Source: Guillardia theta CCMP2712
Taxonomy: Eukaryota; Protista; Cryptophyta
Assembly: GCF_000315625.1 (NCBI RefSeq)
Contig: NW_005434546.1
Coordinates: 125,837 to 189,836, forward strand
DNA: 64,000 nucleotides
Reading direction: 5' to 3'
A program made the position numbers and the translations under genes. Numbering within the stretch: position 1 is the first letter of the stretch; each line of letters begins with the position of its first letter. Below are positions 6,270 through 12,762 of this stretch, in pieces. The notes under the pieces were generated by a model. It worked only from the letters and a program-made list of their open reading frames with translations. It ran no database searches and was not told the origin of the DNA.

Positions 6270-9200
6270 CTAGAAGATGTAGTCTGGGGTCACCGTCTTG
6301 TGCTCCCTCAGCATGTCAGGATGAAACTCCATCCTGGGAACCTTGACCTGCTGCCCGTCACCTCCTCGCCTCCCCCGACGCTCTTCCCTTCCCCCCCTCC
6401 GCTGCTCACCTCCACCAGGTCTGTCAGCTCAATATCCGAGTACTCTAGCCTCCTCTTGGTCGCCTTCGGCAGCACCTACCGCCTCCTCTCAGCAAACCAG
6501 CAGGACCCCAGCAGGACTGTACCACGAGCGAGATCTCAGAGCCCGGCTCTCCTCGTATCAGCTTCTCGCACATCCGCTCCGTCGTCACCTGCCGGCCGTT
6601 CAGTGACTCCCCGACATCTCCAGCTGACGCCCACCAGCTCCCCGTCTACAAAGCAGATAGTGTCCCCGGTCTCCACCTGCAGCGGCTCATCCTCGCAGCT
6701 GGAGCACAGCTGCTCACCTTCCCCCTGCACGGACTGTCGCCGGCGACTCTCGTGACGATGAGCTCTGCTCCCTGCCGCATCCACTCGATGCCGATCCCCT
6801 GGAAGAGCGTGAGGAGGAACGAAAGAGAGGGAGGGAGAGGGATGGCGAGGTAGAGGTAGAGGGAGGGGGAGAGGGAGAGGGAGAGAGAGGGAGAGGGGGA
6901 GAGGGAGAGGTAGAGGACGAGCAGAGATGGAGGAGAGACGGCAGTTAAAAGTGACAAGGTGAAAGAAGGAGAATGGAGCGATGATCGGTGAAGGGGACGA
7001 AAGAAGAGAAGGACGGGAGCTCACGGTTCCTCGGAGAGGATAATAAGGATACTTGGAGCGGAGGATCACATTCGCCTGCTCCCCGAAAAGTTTCTCCACG
7101 TCCCACCTGAGCAGGGGAGAGCGTTTGAGAGTGAGCTAGGAGGCAAGTGCGGTGCAGACAATCGTCTCCATACCCTTCTTTCCACATGCTCTCGATCAAT
7201 CCCTCGACTGACGGCAAGTCAGAGACAAACTTCACAGCTCGACCTCTCCAACGTTGCATGTGCCGGACCATAAAACGATCCTCCACGTGCTTCTTCTCTG
7301 CCCAGCAGCCGTCAGCTTCACACCCTCGGCCCTCGCTGGCTGCCTCCGACCTTCCAACCTGCCTATCACGCTCTCTGCATAGATCCTGCTCCCAAGGCTC
7401 ACTGAAGCGTTTCAACCTCCCCGTCAACTCACTTCTTTGGGACTTGTGGGAGTTGGTCGACGACTAGGTTTTCATAGTCGACGCCTGCAAGCTGAGAGCA
7501 AAAGGTCATTGAGGTGCCCAGGAAGTTCAACGGTTACGCTCAAGTTCTTGTTTTCTTTGAACCATTTGTACCACTGATGCATTGAAATTTGTCCTGCAGG
7601 GTCATGTAAGGATAGAGAAAGTTGACTGAGCTCACGGTCGAGGCGTTTGAGGTTCACCAGGAGTGAAAGTTTCATTTCCTCTGTGCTGCTTCCATTCCTC
7701 CCGCTCGCCGATGATGCCCGGACACTCGACCATGTTGTTCACGTCTCTTTCCACTTCTAGTCCGCAGCCAAACCAGTTGACCGGACAGTGAGCGAAAAGA
7801 TGCTGCAGGACTTTGGTTTGATCTGGCAGACGTTTCAACTTGATGATGGTGTAGAGGGCGAGCAAGAGGAGGCGATTAAGCTTGTCACGAGAGGAGCATG
7901 TCGAGAAAGCGATGGGGAAGGCAGTGATGAGAAGACAGGGAGGAAAATGTGAAGAAACAAGCGTGAACACGTGCGTCACCTTCAGACCCGATCGCATTCT
8001 CTGAGAAATATTTCTTCACATAAAACATCTTTGTCGCTTCCCTCAACTTGAAGCAACACACACCTCAAACGTGAGTTGTCAACGAAAAAGATTACGGCCA
8101 CTACCTGTTGAGCTTTCATGATGTCAGCAGATCTCACGAGACTGTCTTGCAGGGCAAGTCTGTGCGACTGGATTCCCTCTTGGATCTACACAGGTCTTTA
8201 GAACTGAGATTGCAAACATGGAATACCTCGAGAGCTTTGTAATGTTCTGTTTCATTGTTTCTCAACTTGCCCATGGCTTGAAGGATTTCAATCTGTTGCC
8301 ACAGCCTCGCTCATCAACCCTCCTCCTCCCTCTATCTCAAGACTCACCACACTCAGAGCCGTTCCATCCTCATGAATGACGGGGATGTTCAGATCGATAC
8401 CCACAGGTGTTTCTCGAGCGTGTAAATTCGATCCCTGCACCTCTTCCTCCCCGCCCCGCCATTGCTCATTCTCCTCCTCGTCCTCGCCGATCTTCTCTCT
8501 CCACTCCTGTCCTTTCCACAAGTTCTCTTCCTCCTCGTCTTCCATTCCTTCTTCCTTCCTGTCTTCAGCTCGAGACTGCAGCTCGGGTCCGCTCCTCTTC
8601 TCCTCAGCCACGATCAATTCCTTCATCTCCTCGTCCTCGTTCCCATTCTCCTCTGCCCCCCCTCGCACCCTCAGCCTCCCTGACACAAACGACAGGAGGA
8701 CGTCAGAGCAACTCCCTCCTCGCAGCTTCATTGCTGCTGCTCCGACAAGACCTGGATACCCTGAGCTTCTTCCCGCAGCAGGCAGTGTAAGTTACCTTCG
8801 TCCTCCAAGGCCTGTTCAAGGTCCTTGCAGCAACAATCAGCAGCAAGTCTCGACTGGGGTTGTAGTTACCTTTCTCTGCCCCATGTTGAGGGAGAATTTC
8901 TCCACCAGCTCTTCCTTCTCCATGGCTGCTAGCTGGGCAAGCGAAACCTGCCGAGTCAAGATGTCAAACCCAGTCATGATCTACCTATCCCCTCACGTTT
9001 GCTTCCAGCACGCGCTGCCCGACGTCATCGAGCAACTTGTGTTTGACAAGGAACGCCGACAAGTCCATCTCAACTTGCTTGACAGCCGCCGACTTCTTGG
9101 CAGATCTCCTGGCTGCCGCCCCCGGGGCAGCAGACACGCGGGTCGTCTTTGCCTTGCCAACTTTCGTGTTCTTATTCTTCTTGAGCTCCCACTCGAAGTT

Positions 9201-11716
9201 AAGCTCCTCCAGCAACAACTTCTTCTCTGCCGCTAGCAGCCCCTTCCTTATCTTACTCCTCTGCGTCATCACCCACGTCCCCAGGGGAGGGTTTTCCACG
9301 TGGCGTTTGGGCACGTTGGAGTGTCCGTGCTGCCTGTGGAAAGCCTGCAGCTCGAGGTAACGAGCCTCCCACTCCTTGTCCCTCTTTTGGGTTCGCTCGT
9401 CGACGCTCTCGTCGTCGTCGTCGTCAGGGAGGTTGTCAAACGATGAGAAGTCATCGCTGTGGGAGAGGAGGAGGCTCTCGTCTACCACCCCGTTCTCGAT
9501 CAGGACAGTCTGGTTGAACCTGGCAGACACCTCCTCCCTGATAAACCCCGACGGGGATTGCTTCTGCAGCTGCAGAAGCGCTTTGTCTCTTGCCTCCCAC
9601 CCGGCTCTCAGAACTTCACGGCTAGAGTTGTCAGCCGCGTCCTCGTTCAGCAGGAGCCCCTCCTCTCTTAGGATCTTCCTCCTCTCAAACATGCGCATGA
9701 ACTGGAGCTGGTAGGCGTTGTGGTACGAATTGTTCCTAGCCAGCTCGATCGACTCCATCATCATGTCGTCAAACGCCATGACGTGAAATCGTTTGAACTG
9801 CTTGAGCTCTCGGTTGATGTACCTTCGAGCAAGCGACCACAGCTCCAACGAATGATCGTTCGGCTTCGACTTGACAAACTTGCAGTAGTCAAAGAGCGTC
9901 AAGTTGGCTGCCCTGGCAGAGGCGTTGAGGTCTTCGATCCACAAGTGATCCCTCGAAGTATCACTATCACCTCCTGACTTGTCTGCGGTCGTCTTTCCCT
10001 TGTCCTTTGCCACCATTTTCTTCGCTTCCTTCTTTCCATCGGCCATCCTTGTACCATCTGGTCCTTCTCCCTCCTCCTCCGACCACTCTGAGAGCTCCTC
10101 ACTTTGTTGATCGCCCTTAAGCTCCCCAGCTCCTTCCGGCTCCTTCACGTCCGACTGCGTTCCCCACTGCCTCGCAAGATTCTCAAAATTTTCATCCTCG
10201 TTGCCAAGATCGAGGTTGAAACCATCTGCCAAGGACTTGGGAACCTGTTCCTGTTCGCTGCTCAAGGAGATTCACCGCGATTTTCACGGCGAGAACGCAC
10301 TTTACCTCTCGCGTTCCTCTCCCGCCTTTGCATTTTCAGAGGCAATGACGATGGTAGGCGGTTGCACCTGTAGTGAGCAGTCAGCGACATCCAACTTTCA
10401 ACTTCCGCATGTCCTTGCCTGATGGCTCGCTTCCATAAATAGCTGCGGAGAAAGTCAGAGATGAAAGATGGTATGATCCAAAATCACTACAACCACCATA
10501 GGAATTTAAAATCATCAAGCTTCTCATCAGAATCCTTCTTGCCATCATCATCGTCATCATCAAAGATATCACTATCGCCGCCCCCTCTCAAACTCAATAC
10601 TTCACAAAACAATACCTTCGATTGAAGTTCCAGCAGCCTTTGTTGCTCCTAAAAGGGCTTGTCAAAGGGAGGATGGCAATATGCATCAAGGAACAAACCG
10701 CCTCCTGCTGGAGTTTCTGCCTCATCTTTGCCTCTTGCTTCAATGCCCTGCAGGAACAGATTCATACTTTTCTTCTCGTCTTCATCGTTCTTCACCTAGC
10801 CTTCTCCGACTTGCTTTGCCTCACTTCCGAAAGCTTCCTCTTCTTCTCGGGATTCTCCACCTCCTCCTCACCGGCCTGACCGCTCTGGGCACTCGGCGCT
10901 TGTGCGGGGGCCGCAGCAGGAGCTGAGAACAGATCTGGTCGAGTACTTTTCATGTCTTCCAACCACTTGGCGTCGTCCATCAGAATGTCGTCAAGGTCCG
11001 AGCCTCCACGGAGGTTGTTGGGGTTCGAGTGTATCGAGAAGTAACTCTGGTTCCTCCGTAAGAGCCTGGAAGTCAGCGCATTCTTCAGCTGCGGAACCTC
11101 AGTCTCGAGGAACGATCTCTTTGCAAGCTCATGACTGAAGTCCCCTTCACTTTTCAGCGCGCTCTGGAGCTTCCTCCTTTGGAGACGTCGATCCAATGCA
11201 GCGACTTCACTCGGATCTGCCAACTTCTTCATCTCTTCCCACTCATCCGTTCCGTTGAGATGTTGGTAGGCTGTCATGAGGTCAATCCAGCCCTCGAACT
11301 TGTACCCCTTGCTCTCCGGGCAATCGAAATGATAGCCCTGGTGGAATGCGATCTGAAGGTCAAAATTTAGTATGTCGCCAGGTCGACCAGCAACGCACAA
11401 CCTCTCTCATCAGACGGCTGACATTGCTCGGTTTCGCAGTTCGCCCCATGATCTTGACCGCAGGCAACGAGTCGTCCTCCATCTGCTCACTGCCAGCGGC
11501 GGTTGTGTTCAACCTTCGGAAGAACTGCCCGTCACTTGCCACGAATATGCTGTCAGTAAGAGCTCCACAACCACCACGAACGCGCAACGTGGCATGCTGG
11601 AAGGGAACTGAAAGCTGTCGGGCGATGCTGCTGTCAGTTGTTTGCAGTTGGAGAACAGAGAAGAAAGAAATTTGAATGAATAGCTCCAGCCCTGGGGATT
11701 GCCTACCAACAACCAT
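6270..11716 (-). CDS. Large spliced multidomain protein: leader, unknown segments, helicase-associated (HA) domain, SAM domain and C-terminal PDZ-like domain, with (L/V)RGG linkers
   Basis: HA: WEARYLELQAFHRQHGHSNVPKRHVENPPLGTWVMTQRSKIRKGLLAAEKKLLLEELNFEW. SAM after splicing: LSAFLVKHKLLDDVGQRVLEANVSLAQLAAMEKEELVEKFSLNMGQRKDLEQAL. PDZ-like: GIGIEWMRQGAELIVTRVAGDSP...GDTICFVDG. A phase-1 intron joins the SAM exon in frame to ORF 8288-8731. Could instead be 2-3 genes. Confidence 0.6.
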
Positions 11717-12762
11717 GATTGCTATCGATGCATTTCATGCTTTCTTGCTATCTAGAGACTTGACTTTGTCGCCGCATTTGATGCAGATGATGTTGAGGAT
11801 CACGAGAGATGCAGGAGGGCAGATCATTCCCAGGGCCGTTTCCCTTCATTCTACTAAATCGCTTTCCTTCCTGAACAAAAAGGGCAAAGTTAGCAGGTGA
11901 GCATTGTCAACTAAACGAGAAGATTTATGTGCTCGCGATAGAGGGAGAGGGATGGATAAATGGAGTGGTGGAAGCGGAAAGACATGCAGGTAGCGGGAAA
12001 GGGGAGTTGGTGGGGGTGCATTGATACGAGGAGGCTTTCGAGGGAAGGGCAAGGGCAAGAAGGATGGGATCGCGCGAGACAAGGAGTGAGTAGGGTGACA
12101 AGAGACTGGAAGAGGAGGGCAGAAGAGAGGTGAGGACAGTGCTGAAGGGAAAGAACGATGGAGGAGAGGATGTGGATGTGGGGAGGAGGAGGAGGTGAGA
12201 GTCAAGCAAGTCTGGCTAGATTCGTTCGCTGATGAGGACGCATTGGATTGGAAATGGCATCAGAAGTATCCCTGAAGATACAATGACCAATCCGGGCCCG
12301 CTCCGGTTCTCAGTCTTTATGGATCGCCATCTGCCGCGGTCACGTTTCGACTCTTCACATATCGGGAATGCGGGGCAGCGGGGGAAGGAGAAGAGAGTTG
12401 GAGCTGTTGGTAGGGGCGGCAAGAGGTTAAGAGTGCATGAACACGAGAGCAAGAACATGAGCGAGATGGTATGAGACAGATATATGAGAGAGGAGATATG
12501 AGAGAATGGAATTGAGAGTAAGATAACGATAGCAAGAACATGAGGGTGAGAGCATGAGAGTAAGCGCAGGCAATGTGTATCGCAGATGAGGTTTCTGCAA
12601 TGTACAAGTGGTCGTACCCCATTGACGAGCGCGGATGTGCTTTAGCCCTTTTAGACAAGGGGGTTTCCCTTCATGATAGGCGCGCTTCGTGTCATCCTTG
12701 GCTCACGTTCATCACAGGCTAAAACTCGCAGTCAGGAACTACCAGGGCCAGCAGTATCCAGC

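What the first reader, a model, noticed from the sequence alone, without database searches (positions are those of the whole stretch)
6270..11716. Putative polyprotein segmented by ubiquitin-tail-like (L/V)RGG motifs
Seen: LRVRGG (11570-11587) just after the leader, NLRGG (11002-11016), SLRGG (10577-10594, could be partly intronic), KLRGG (8714-8728, could be intronic) and RLRVRGG (8657-8677). Several are followed by acidic stretches and separate distinct modules (unknown; unknown; HA + SAM; PDZ-containing). The SAM exon splices in frame into the RLRVRGG exon with either of two acceptors, and there is no room for a promoter between them. Established: deubiquitinases cleave after LRGG, and ERAD-derived ubiquitin-dependent machinery imports proteins into the periplastid compartment of complex red plastids. 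Inference: a signal-bearing precursor processed by a DUB/ULP-type protease into several proteins, including nucleic-acid-binding HA/SAM units possibly destined for the periplastid compartment or nucleomorph.
Basis: partly seen in the sequence, partly recalled or inferred. Interest (0 to 1): 0.7.

Follow-up and report, generated by a model that had tools for sequence, protein, structure and literature searches.

The report
Conserved LRGG sites split algal precursor
A single Guillardia theta gene encodes an import leader plus three unrelated protein modules, each boundary marked by ubiquitin's tail motif (LRGG), and a distant relative keeps the motif at the same three places, so the protein is probably cut into pieces after import, though no cutting has been shown.

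Summary
All five motifs are at the stated coordinates on the minus strand. The locus is the annotated 23-exon gene GUITHDRAFT_118481 of Guillardia theta (1238 aa). Three motifs are exonic: LRVRGG after the leader, NLRGG, and RLRVRGG after the SAM domain. SLRGGG and KLRGG lie in the model's two atypically long introns.

The clustering is not compositional. I count 7 [LV]RGG on this strand against 0.7-0.9 in dinucleotide shuffles. Twenty-two other LRGG-leader genes carry 1 extra motif in 33 kb.

My own sampling confirms a class this scan has already noted many times elsewhere in this genome: signal peptide, spacer, then LRGG (18 of 30 unselected LRLRGG sites). Earlier notes read these as periplastid import leaders. 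The internal copies have not been reported before.

The decisive evidence is a metagenomic ortholog from an unidentified organism (67% GC, 36-40% identity). It has the same module order on one strand and exactly three in-frame LRGGs, at the equivalent places. The second sits at the same distance, within one residue, from a conserved block. One of its ORFs also runs straight across two G. theta introns, which confirms the fused model at that junction.

Best reading (about 0.5): a periplastid-targeted precursor cut after each LRGG. Cleavage, a single transcript and the enzyme are all unproven.

The parts
6273..11716 (-). Annotated CDS of GUITHDRAFT_118481 (EKX35357.1 / XP_005822337.1 / UniProt L1IH13). 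It has 23 exons and encodes 1238 aa. Of its 22 introns, 18 are 41-67 nt long.
   Evidence: P0002 is 100% identical to the window exons. Exon map. Names.
11570..11716 (-). N-terminal leader, residues 1-49: a hydrophobic core (LELFIQISFFSVLQL), a spacer, then LRVRGG at 11570-11587.
   Evidence: It has the same layout as 18 of 30 sampled LRLRGG sites. The P4 Val variant is also seen in leaders L073 and L088. Its hydrophobic core scores KD12 1.72, weaker than is typical.
11760..11827 (-). Possible unannotated first exon. ATG 11827 encodes a stronger signal-peptide-like start (KD12 2.35). An in-frame 57-nt GT..AG intron (11703-11759) would join it to the annotated leader.
   Evidence: frame-consistency only. 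No transcript evidence.
11017..11569 (-). Module 1a, residues 50-214, with a 49-nt intron at 11353-11401. It has no family match, no paralog and no detectable similarity to the ortholog.
11002..11016 (-). Internal site 2, NLRGG (residues 215-219). A 28-residue basic, acid-free stretch precedes it.
   Evidence: The ortholog has AALRGG at the same position (L069 nt 5474). The distance from GG to the conserved ..M.xTRPDLF block is 14 residues in one and 15 in the other.
10927..11001 (-). Conserved acidic block immediately after site 2 (SDLDD..DD.W.EDM..TRPDLF). Detectable conservation with the ortholog starts at the motif.
   Evidence: (E = 2.9e-9 for residues 221-319).
10616..10747 (-). Two short Lys/Glu-rich linker exons (10699-10747 and 10616-10648), separated by a 50-nt intron. 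A 48-nt intron (10748-10795) that contains the in-frame stop at 10792 joins them to exon 2.
   Evidence: In the ortholog the same sequence is contiguous in one ORF, which confirms these introns.
10577..10594 (-). SLRGGG followed by an Asp run, inside the annotated 248-nt intron (10368-10615). It is in frame with the upstream exon only if that intron is retained, and the frame then ends at the stop at 10487-10489. The ortholog has no counterpart.
8997..10257 (-). Large exon encoding a conserved helical domain plus the HA domain (HA at about 9195-9380).
   Evidence: Pfam HA, E = 1.4e-19. Hanusia phi homolog at 53% identity. Ortholog at E = 2e-54.
8796..9062 (-). SAM-like five-helix domain (residues 738-795), spread over three exons with introns of 49 and 46 nt.
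   Evidence: AF2 pLDDT is about 80-87 here. Foldseek's top hits are tankyrase SAM domains: TM 0.74-0.79, rmsd 1.8-1.9 A, but E = 0.16. Pfam finds no SAM. The ortholog keeps ..GQRKDLQRAL...
8714..8728 (-). KLRGG inside the annotated 116-nt intron (8680-8795). It becomes exonic and in frame if the acceptor at 8752/8751 is used, which gives a 44-nt intron.
   Evidence: The alternative-acceptor arithmetic is my reading of the sequence. The ortholog has no counterpart.
8657..8677 (-). Internal site 3, RLRVRGG (residues 795-801). It starts right after the last SAM helix and is followed by about 100 acidic residues.
   Evidence: The ortholog has GLPGLRGG in the same SAM-to-C-terminal-module linker (L069 nt 7851).
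6273..8656 (-). Module 3: an acidic linker, then a conserved domain and a PDZ-like domain (residues 1129-1200, exons within 6410-6798), spread over 15 exons.
   Evidence: PDZ_2 at E = 2.4e-4, 21.8 bits, below the cut-off. The ortholog matches at E = 2e-20 within one ORF, which supports the small exons.
6481..6492 (-). LLRGGG inside a typical 47-nt intron (6476-6522). Probably not coding.

Best explanation
The region is one nuclear gene of the cryptophyte Guillardia theta. It encodes a precursor with a signal-peptide-type leader ending in LRVRGG, followed by three unrelated modules:
- a fast-evolving 165-residue piece;
- an acidic, coiled linker plus a conserved helical domain, an HA domain and a SAM domain;
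- an acidic linker plus a conserved domain and a PDZ-like domain.

The modules are separated by NLRGG and RLRVRGG. The leader belongs to a large class in this genome (signal peptide, spacer, LRGG) that marks proteins sent to the periplastid compartment, the relict endosymbiont cytoplasm that holds the nucleomorph.

I infer that the step which recognises LRGG at the end of those leaders, most likely a cut after Gly-Gly, also acts at the two internal sites. One import event would then deliver up to three separate proteins.

Shown: the gene model, the leader class, the non-random clustering, and conservation of the three sites and of the module order.

Inferred: the periplastid destination, cleavage at any LRGG, and the nature of the enzyme.
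For: 1. Gene model. The 1238-aa protein P0002 matches the window exon for exon.

2. The model is confirmed at the one junction where a stop codon had to be spliced out. In the ortholog L069 the sequence of G. theta exons 2, 3 and 4 is contiguous in a single ORF. The 15 small C-terminal exons align to one ORF at E = 2e-20.

3. The Hanusia phi transcriptome ORF for the HA exon starts and ends within 7-9 residues of G. theta's intron positions. The exon therefore looks internal there too.

4. Leader class. The LRLRGG DNA pattern occurs 353 times against 255 for the control. Of 30 unselected sites, 18 lie 29-73 codons after an ATG followed by a hydrophobic core. In L053 the EF-Tu GTPase domain of an EF-1alpha-like protein starts 3 residues after GG.

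5. Clustering. I count 7 motifs against 0.7-0.9 expected, with 0 of 300 shuffles reaching 7. The rate is 37 times that in 22 other leader genes.

6. Conservation. The ortholog has exactly three in-frame LRGGs on that strand: at the leader end, at the position aligned with NLRGG (same distance, within one residue, from a conserved block), and in the linker between SAM and the C-terminal module.

7. No signal peptide plus ATG precedes the internal sites in the ortholog.

8. RLRVRGG begins where the confident SAM model ends.
Against: - No cleavage is shown, here or for any LRGG leader.
- No transcript evidence for G. theta was available.
- The link from the linker exons to the HA exon, and from SAM to module 3, rests on the annotated introns and on conserved order alone.
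- In the GC-rich ortholog the raw count of three motifs equals the shuffle expectation over three frames (2.9). The support there is positional, and for the third site only at the level of a linker.
- There is only one independent ortholog. L070 is the same organism, and that organism is unidentified.
- Two of G. theta's three exonic sites have Val at P4. That variant is not enriched genome-wide (146 against 141) and is leader-like at only 2 of 20 sampled sites.
- No ubiquitin fold lies upstream of any site, so a standard DUB is an unlikely enzyme.
- The modules were not found as separate genes anywhere.
Confidence: 0.5

Rival explanations
1. This is one multi-domain periplastid protein that stays intact. 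The internal LRGG motifs would be conserved short linear motifs that are bound but not cut, for example re-engagement points for the ubiquitin-dependent import motor. Alternatively they are simply part of conserved linker blocks.
For: Conservation shows constraint, not cleavage. The conserved block around site 2 extends 25 residues beyond GG. Ordinary DUBs need the ubiquitin fold, which is absent. The three modules stay together in both species.
Against: The same four residues end many unrelated leaders exactly where the conserved mature proteins begin, which is what a processing site looks like. Other leader genes carry almost no internal copies. The sites fall between modules rather than inside them.
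Confidence: 0.27
2. The model fuses two or three tightly packed genes, or descends from a fusion of them. Each would have had its own LRGG-ended leader, and the internal motifs would be leader ends or their relics.
For: An ATG at 10725 opens a signal-peptide-like stretch and a basic spacer, one nucleotide out of frame with LSLRGGG. An ATG at 8731 starts MKLRGG.. and overlaps the stop of the read-through SAM frame. The Hanusia ORF for the HA exon starts with Met. Four introns are atypically long.
Against: In the ortholog the first junction is a continuous ORF, and neither internal LRGG there follows an ATG plus signal peptide. NLRGG lies deep inside a long exon with no upstream start. The leader-like relics SLRGGG and KLRGG are the ones that are not conserved. 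The gaps are 50-120 nt, too short for separate promoters, though that last point is an inference.
Confidence: 0.13
3. The motifs are chance products of purine-rich, Arg- and Gly-rich sequence and have no function.
For: The motif is only four residues long. The LRVRGG pattern shows no genome-wide excess. In the ortholog the count equals the shuffle expectation.
Against: None of 300 composition-preserving shuffles reached the observed count. Poisson P = 2.4e-5 for the protein. The rate is 37 times that of comparable genes. The sites are positionally conserved in an ortholog of 36-40% identity, one of them within one residue.
Confidence: 0.05

Closest known systems
LRGG-ended import leaders of Guillardia theta
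   Same: The N-terminus has the same layout: ATG, hydrophobic core, spacer, then (L/V)RGG 43 residues from the start. Acidic or small residues often follow GG.
   Different: This gene repeats the motif twice more inside the protein, at module borders. None of the 22 other leader genes I sampled does that. P4 is Val at two of the three sites.
Ubiquitin-fusion precursors (polyubiquitin, ubiquitin-ribosomal protein fusions), cut after LRLRGG by deubiquitinases
   Same: The same C-terminal tail motif marks the border between units of a precursor. A cut after Gly-Gly would release the downstream protein.
   Different: No ubiquitin (beta-grasp) fold precedes any site here: Pfam finds none, and the models show helices or disorder. 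The units are unrelated proteins.
Viral polyproteins processed at LXGG by papain-like proteases that also act as deubiquitinases (coronavirus PLpro type)
   Same: A bare LXGG lies in linkers between unrelated modules, with no ubiquitin fold.
   Different: This is a cellular nuclear gene with introns. No protease domain was detected in cis. The comparison rests on my own knowledge of those viruses and was not tested here.
Nucleus-encoded plastid polyproteins of Euglena and dinoflagellates (LHC, RuBisCO small subunit)
   Same: One N-terminal targeting leader serves several mature proteins that are separated after import into a complex plastid.
   Different: Those are tandem copies of one protein joined by short conserved linkers. 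Here the units are unrelated, the motif is ubiquitin's tail, and the inferred destination is the periplastid compartment. This rests on my own knowledge and was not tested.
SELMA, the ERAD-derived ubiquitin-dependent translocon of complex red plastids, with its deubiquitinase ptDUP
   Same: It supplies a ubiquitin-handling machinery in the very compartment where LRGG would be read.
   Different: The ptDUP clade is reported absent from cryptophytes (PMC12412216). No link between SELMA and LRGG motifs has been shown.

Membership tests
LRGG-ended signal-peptide leader class of G. theta | An in-frame ATG followed by a hydrophobic, signal-peptide-like core. | tested here: inconclusive
   From the annotated start the core scores KD12 1.72, below the 2.0 or more reached by 18 sampled leaders. 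A possible upstream exon would give 2.35. No signal-peptide predictor was available.
LRGG-ended signal-peptide leader class of G. theta | (L)RGG about 29-75 residues from the start, after a spacer. | tested here: met
   LRVRGG occupies residues 44-49. P4 is Val, a minor variant also seen in L073 and L088.
LRGG-ended signal-peptide leader class of G. theta | The motif is kept in orthologs while the rest of the leader drifts. | tested here: met
   The ortholog's leader is unrelated in sequence but ends IMLRGG, 70 residues from its ATG.
Polyprotein (one precursor cut into separate proteins) | All units are encoded in one ORF or transcript. | tested here: inconclusive
   The annotated model is a single ORF. 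The first junction is confirmed by a contiguous ortholog ORF. The other junctions rest on canonical short introns and on conserved order. No transcript data were available.
Polyprotein (one precursor cut into separate proteins) | A conserved processing motif at each unit border. | tested here: met
   Three LRGG sites lie at equivalent borders in G. theta and in the ortholog.
Polyprotein (one precursor cut into separate proteins) | Proteolytic release of the units. | not testable with these tools
   Needs N-terminomics, immunoblots or reporter assays.
Ubiquitin / ubiquitin-like fusion precursor | A beta-grasp ubiquitin fold immediately upstream of the RGG tail. | tested here: not met
   No ubiquitin-family Pfam hit. 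The AF2 models show disorder or helices before sites 1 and 2, and a SAM helix before site 3. The models are low-confidence outside the SAM region.
HA (helicase-associated) domain, PF03457 | A match above Pfam's gathering score. | tested here: met
   69.3 bits against a cut-off of 28.4, E = 3.5e-19. PDB 2kta matches at E = 5.8e-5.
SAM domain | Sequence-profile match. | tested here: not met
   No SAM family at E <= 1 on the full model, nor on single exons.
SAM domain | A five-helix SAM fold. | tested here: met
   AF2 pLDDT is about 80-87 for residues 738-795. Tankyrase-1 SAM domains are the top Foldseek hits: TM 0.74-0.79, rmsd 1.8-1.9 A, 28-31% identity. The E-value is only 0.16, because the query was a long model that is mostly low-confidence.
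PDZ domain | A match above Pfam's gathering score. | tested here: inconclusive
   PDZ_2 scores 21.8 bits against a cut-off of 27, E = 2.4e-4. The segment is conserved in the ortholog.

The most novel reading that the evidence does not exclude
This would be a conserved cellular polyprotein for the relict endosymbiont cytoplasm. One ubiquitin-tail-specific peptidase, still unidentified in cryptophytes (which lack the ptDUP clade), would both remove LRGG-ended import leaders and cut this precursor at two internal LRGG sites. One import event would then deliver three unrelated proteins, one of which (HA + SAM) could act on the nucleomorph. The gene would be a natural multi-site substrate for finding that enzyme.
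Probability: 0.42. Interest if true: 0.85.

Novelty: new variant of a known kind. Interest (0 to 1): 0.72.

Why it matters
If the internal sites are cut, this is the first nuclear-encoded polyprotein proposed for the periplastid compartment. It would also be the first cellular precursor segmented by bare ubiquitin-tail motifs with no ubiquitin fold.

It would turn the LRGG leader ending from a statistical mark into a testable processing code. Three sites in one protein give built-in size shifts and three predicted neo-N-termini (residues 50, 220 and 802).

It also bears on an open question: which enzyme handles ubiquitin-like tails in the cryptophyte periplastid compartment, where the ptDUP clade is reported missing (PMC12412216).

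Even if the protein is not cut, conserved LRGG motifs outside leaders would show that the motif is read by something other than position at the N-terminus.

Tried and rejected
- Tiny 16-nt GT..AG introns flanking a 'TGFDIL' stretch in the SAM region. Rejected: the annotated 49- and 46-nt introns give a SAM of the right length that folds confidently.
- Paralogs of module 1 or of the HA exon in G. theta. None found; only the HA domain recurs. Other HA loci show no evident leader.
- Word-based protein searches with residues 1-337 and 906-1238. No hits in the allowed length ranges. That says nothing about shorter or longer relatives.
- Pfam on single exons. The pieces are too short to be informative.
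- Genome-wide excess of the LRVRGG hexamer. None: 146 against 141 for the control.
- AF2 on residues 1-340 and 700-1238 without an alignment. Mean pLDDT was 46 and 42; only the SAM region is usable.
- A metagenome scan for more orthologs. It returned only a second contig of the same organism (L070).
- Look-up of DNA for the Hanusia protein. Not on record.
- Literature searches for LRGG with Guillardia, with transit peptide, or with periplastid, and for the gene's locus tag. Nothing relevant.
- A canonical splice path that would place SLRGGG in the main ORF. I found none by hand.

I searched no hand-joined spliced model in any tool. The only spliced protein used is the database entry P0002. The alternative splice forms (the 44-nt intron and the upstream exon) were checked for frame only, and were not searched.

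Full report
**What the sequence is.** The window is contig 128 of the 87-Mb, 669-contig nuclear genome of Guillardia theta. The locus is the annotated gene GUITHDRAFT_118481 (EKX35357.1, XP_005822337.1, UniProt L1IH13). A full HMMER scan with the large minus-strand ORF returned a 1238-aa protein, P0002, that is 100% identical to it. Threading P0002 onto the window gives 23 exons from ATG 11716 to the stop after 6273. Of the 22 GT..AG introns, 18 are 41-67 nt long and four are outliers of 248, 116, 223 and 226 nt.

**The observation.** In the annotated protein three are exonic:
- LRVRGG, residues 44-49;
- NLRGG, residues 215-219;
- RLRVRGG, residues 795-801.

SLRGGG lies in the 248-nt intron and KLRGG in the 116-nt intron. 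A sixth copy, LLRGGG, lies in a 47-nt intron.

Composition does not explain the clustering:
- I count 7 [LV]RGG in the three frames of this strand, against 0.7-0.9 in dinucleotide-preserving shuffles, even when shuffled in 150-nt blocks. None of 300 shuffles reached 7.
- The protein has 3 against 0.053 expected (P = 2.4e-5).
- The rest of the window has 0.06 per kb-strand, against 1.13 here.

**Domains.**
- HA is solid (PF03457, E = 3.5e-19).
- SAM is not found by Pfam. However, the annotated splice form folds into a five-helix bundle with pLDDT about 80-87, and its best structural matches are tankyrase SAM domains (TM 0.74-0.79, rmsd 1.8-1.9 A, weak E = 0.16).
- PDZ_2 scores 21.8 bits, below Pfam's cut-off of 27.
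- Module 1 and most of module 3 match no family, have no paralog and drew no word-search hit.

**The first motif belongs to a genome-wide leader class.** A DNA pattern for L-R-G-G-x-D-x-D found 44 sites against 18 for the control. Several sat shortly after an ATG and a hydrophobic stretch.

I then took an unselected sample. The LRLRGG pattern occurs 353 times against 255 for the control. Of the first 30 sites, 18 lie 29-73 codons after an in-frame ATG followed by a hydrophobic core with KD12 of 2.0 or more.

In one of these (L053) the EF-Tu GTPase domain of an EF-1alpha-like protein begins three residues after GG. There the leader ends where the conserved cytosolic-type protein normally begins. 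A signal-peptide-bearing translation factor in a cryptophyte is best explained by targeting to the periplastid compartment. That is an inference.

Earlier notes of this scan report the same leader class at many other loci of this genome and read it the same way. None mentions internal copies or a polyprotein. I found no description of the motif in the searchable literature.

The Val-at-P4 form used here is a minor variant. The LRVRGG pattern has no genome-wide excess (146 against 141), and only 2 of 20 sampled sites look like leaders.

**This gene is exceptional among leader genes.** Twenty-two other leader-bearing genes carry one further [LV]RGG in 33 kb of downstream sequence. This gene carries six in 5.3 kb.

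**The decisive evidence is an ortholog.** One HMMER hit, P0150, comes from a 57-kb ENA metagenome contig. Its locus L069 (67% GC, organism unidentified) carries the whole gene on one strand in the same order:
- a 657-aa ORF that starts with a signal-peptide-like core and a spacer ending IMLRGG, 70 residues from the ATG;
- the helical and HA module (36% identity, E = 2e-54);
- the SAM segment;
- the C-terminal module with the PDZ-like part (E = 2e-20).

That strand has exactly three [LVFI]RGG, all LRGG and all in the coding frames:
- the first ends the leader;
- the second, AALRGG, aligns with G. theta's NLRGG;
- the third, GLPGLRGG, lies between SAM and the C-terminal module, where G. theta has RLRVRGG.

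For the second site, the conserved block ..M.xTRPDLF starts 14 residues after GG in one species and 15 in the other, while nothing upstream of the motif is alignable.

The same ORF runs without interruption through the sequence that G. theta splits into exons 2, 3 and 4. This confirms the 48- and 50-nt introns and shows that the in-frame stop at 10792 is intronic. Module 1 and the linker are therefore one reading frame, not two genes.

A second contig, L070, is the same organism and adds nothing independent.

Caveats on the ortholog:
- In this GC-rich DNA three motifs over three frames equals the shuffle expectation (2.9). The support is positional, not numerical.
- For the third site the equivalence holds only at the level of a linker.
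- SLRGGG, KLRGG and LLRGGG have no counterpart.

**Other evidence on gene structure.** The only close homolog of the HA exon is a 410-aa Hanusia phi transcriptome ORF (53% identity). It begins 7 residues after G. theta's acceptor and ends 9 residues after G. theta's donor. The simplest reading is intron retention at conserved intron positions, which would make this an internal exon there as well. A stand-alone gene in Hanusia cannot be excluded.

Some features point to former or alternative starts:
- An ATG at 10725 opens a signal-peptide-like stretch and a basic spacer, one nucleotide out of frame with LSLRGGG.
- An ATG at 8731 begins MKLRGG.. and overlaps the stop of the read-through SAM frame.
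- An acceptor at 8752/8751 would give a typical 44-nt intron and put KLRGG in frame (my reading).
- A possible upstream exon at 11760-11827 would supply a stronger signal peptide.

**Interpretation.** The conserved picture is a leader plus three modules, with LRGG at each border. The motif ends many unrelated leaders exactly at the mature N-terminus, and other leader genes almost never repeat it. The most economical reading is that whatever acts on LRGG at leaders also acts at the two internal sites. The gene would then be a polyprotein for the periplastid compartment (confidence about 0.5).

The enzyme is open. Ordinary deubiquitinases need the ubiquitin fold, which is absent here. The SELMA-associated ptDUP clade is reported missing from cryptophytes (PMC12412216).

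The rivals are:
- an intact multi-domain protein with bound-but-uncut motifs (0.27);
- fused or mis-fused neighbouring genes (0.13), weakened by the contiguous ortholog ORF and by the lack of starts before the ortholog's internal sites;
- chance (0.05).

**Limits.** There is no transcript, proteomic or localisation evidence. There is one independent ortholog, of unknown taxon. AF2 was run without alignments. I searched no hand-joined spliced model; only the database protein P0002 was used, and the alternative splice forms were checked for frame alone.

Noticed in passing
window 11703-11827 (-): An ATG at 11827 encodes a stronger signal-peptide-like start (KD12 2.35, against 1.72 for the annotated start). 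An in-frame 57-nt GT..AG intron would join it to the annotated leader, so the public model may lack its first exon.
   Followed up: partly
window 10594-10725 (-): Inside the annotated introns, an ATG at 10725 opens a hydrophobic stretch plus a basic spacer. It is one nucleotide out of frame with LSLRGGG and its Asp run. This looks like a decayed or miscalled second leader; a T-run lies at the frame switch.
   Followed up: partly
window 8728-8731 (-): If the 116-nt intron is retained, the stop of the SAM reading frame and the ATG of MKLRGG.. overlap as ATGA.
   Followed up: no
window 6799-7024 (-): The 226-nt intron is filled with a CT-rich simple repeat that reads as ..PLPLSLSLPLPLP.. in one frame.
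   Followed up: no
L069:5380-5470 and L069:8400-8500 (also L070): The peptide TKWTRLV(L)PP(S)VLSGH recurs at two places where the ortholog alignment has gaps. It looks like a repeated intron-borne (introner-like) element of the unidentified GC-rich organism.
   Followed up: no
G000:C23:594893-602045 and G000:C136:82905-100384: There are five FRVRGG-coding sites spaced about 1.7-1.8 kb apart, and four identical LRGGKDDD-coding sites. These are probably tandem gene families that each carry the motif. A 24-nt word coding LRGGVDTD occurs on at least ten, mostly small, contigs and is a repeat family.
   Followed up: no
L053 (G000:C3:1063784-1066800, - strand): An EF-1alpha-like GTPase sits behind a signal peptide and a leader ending LRLRGG. 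The conserved N-terminus GKEK.. starts directly after GG. It is a candidate periplastid translation factor.
   Followed up: partly
P0001 (Hanusia phi) against window 8997-10257: The Hanusia transcriptome ORF begins and ends within 7-9 residues of G. theta's intron positions. This suggests retained introns in that assembly and conserved intron sites.
   Followed up: partly
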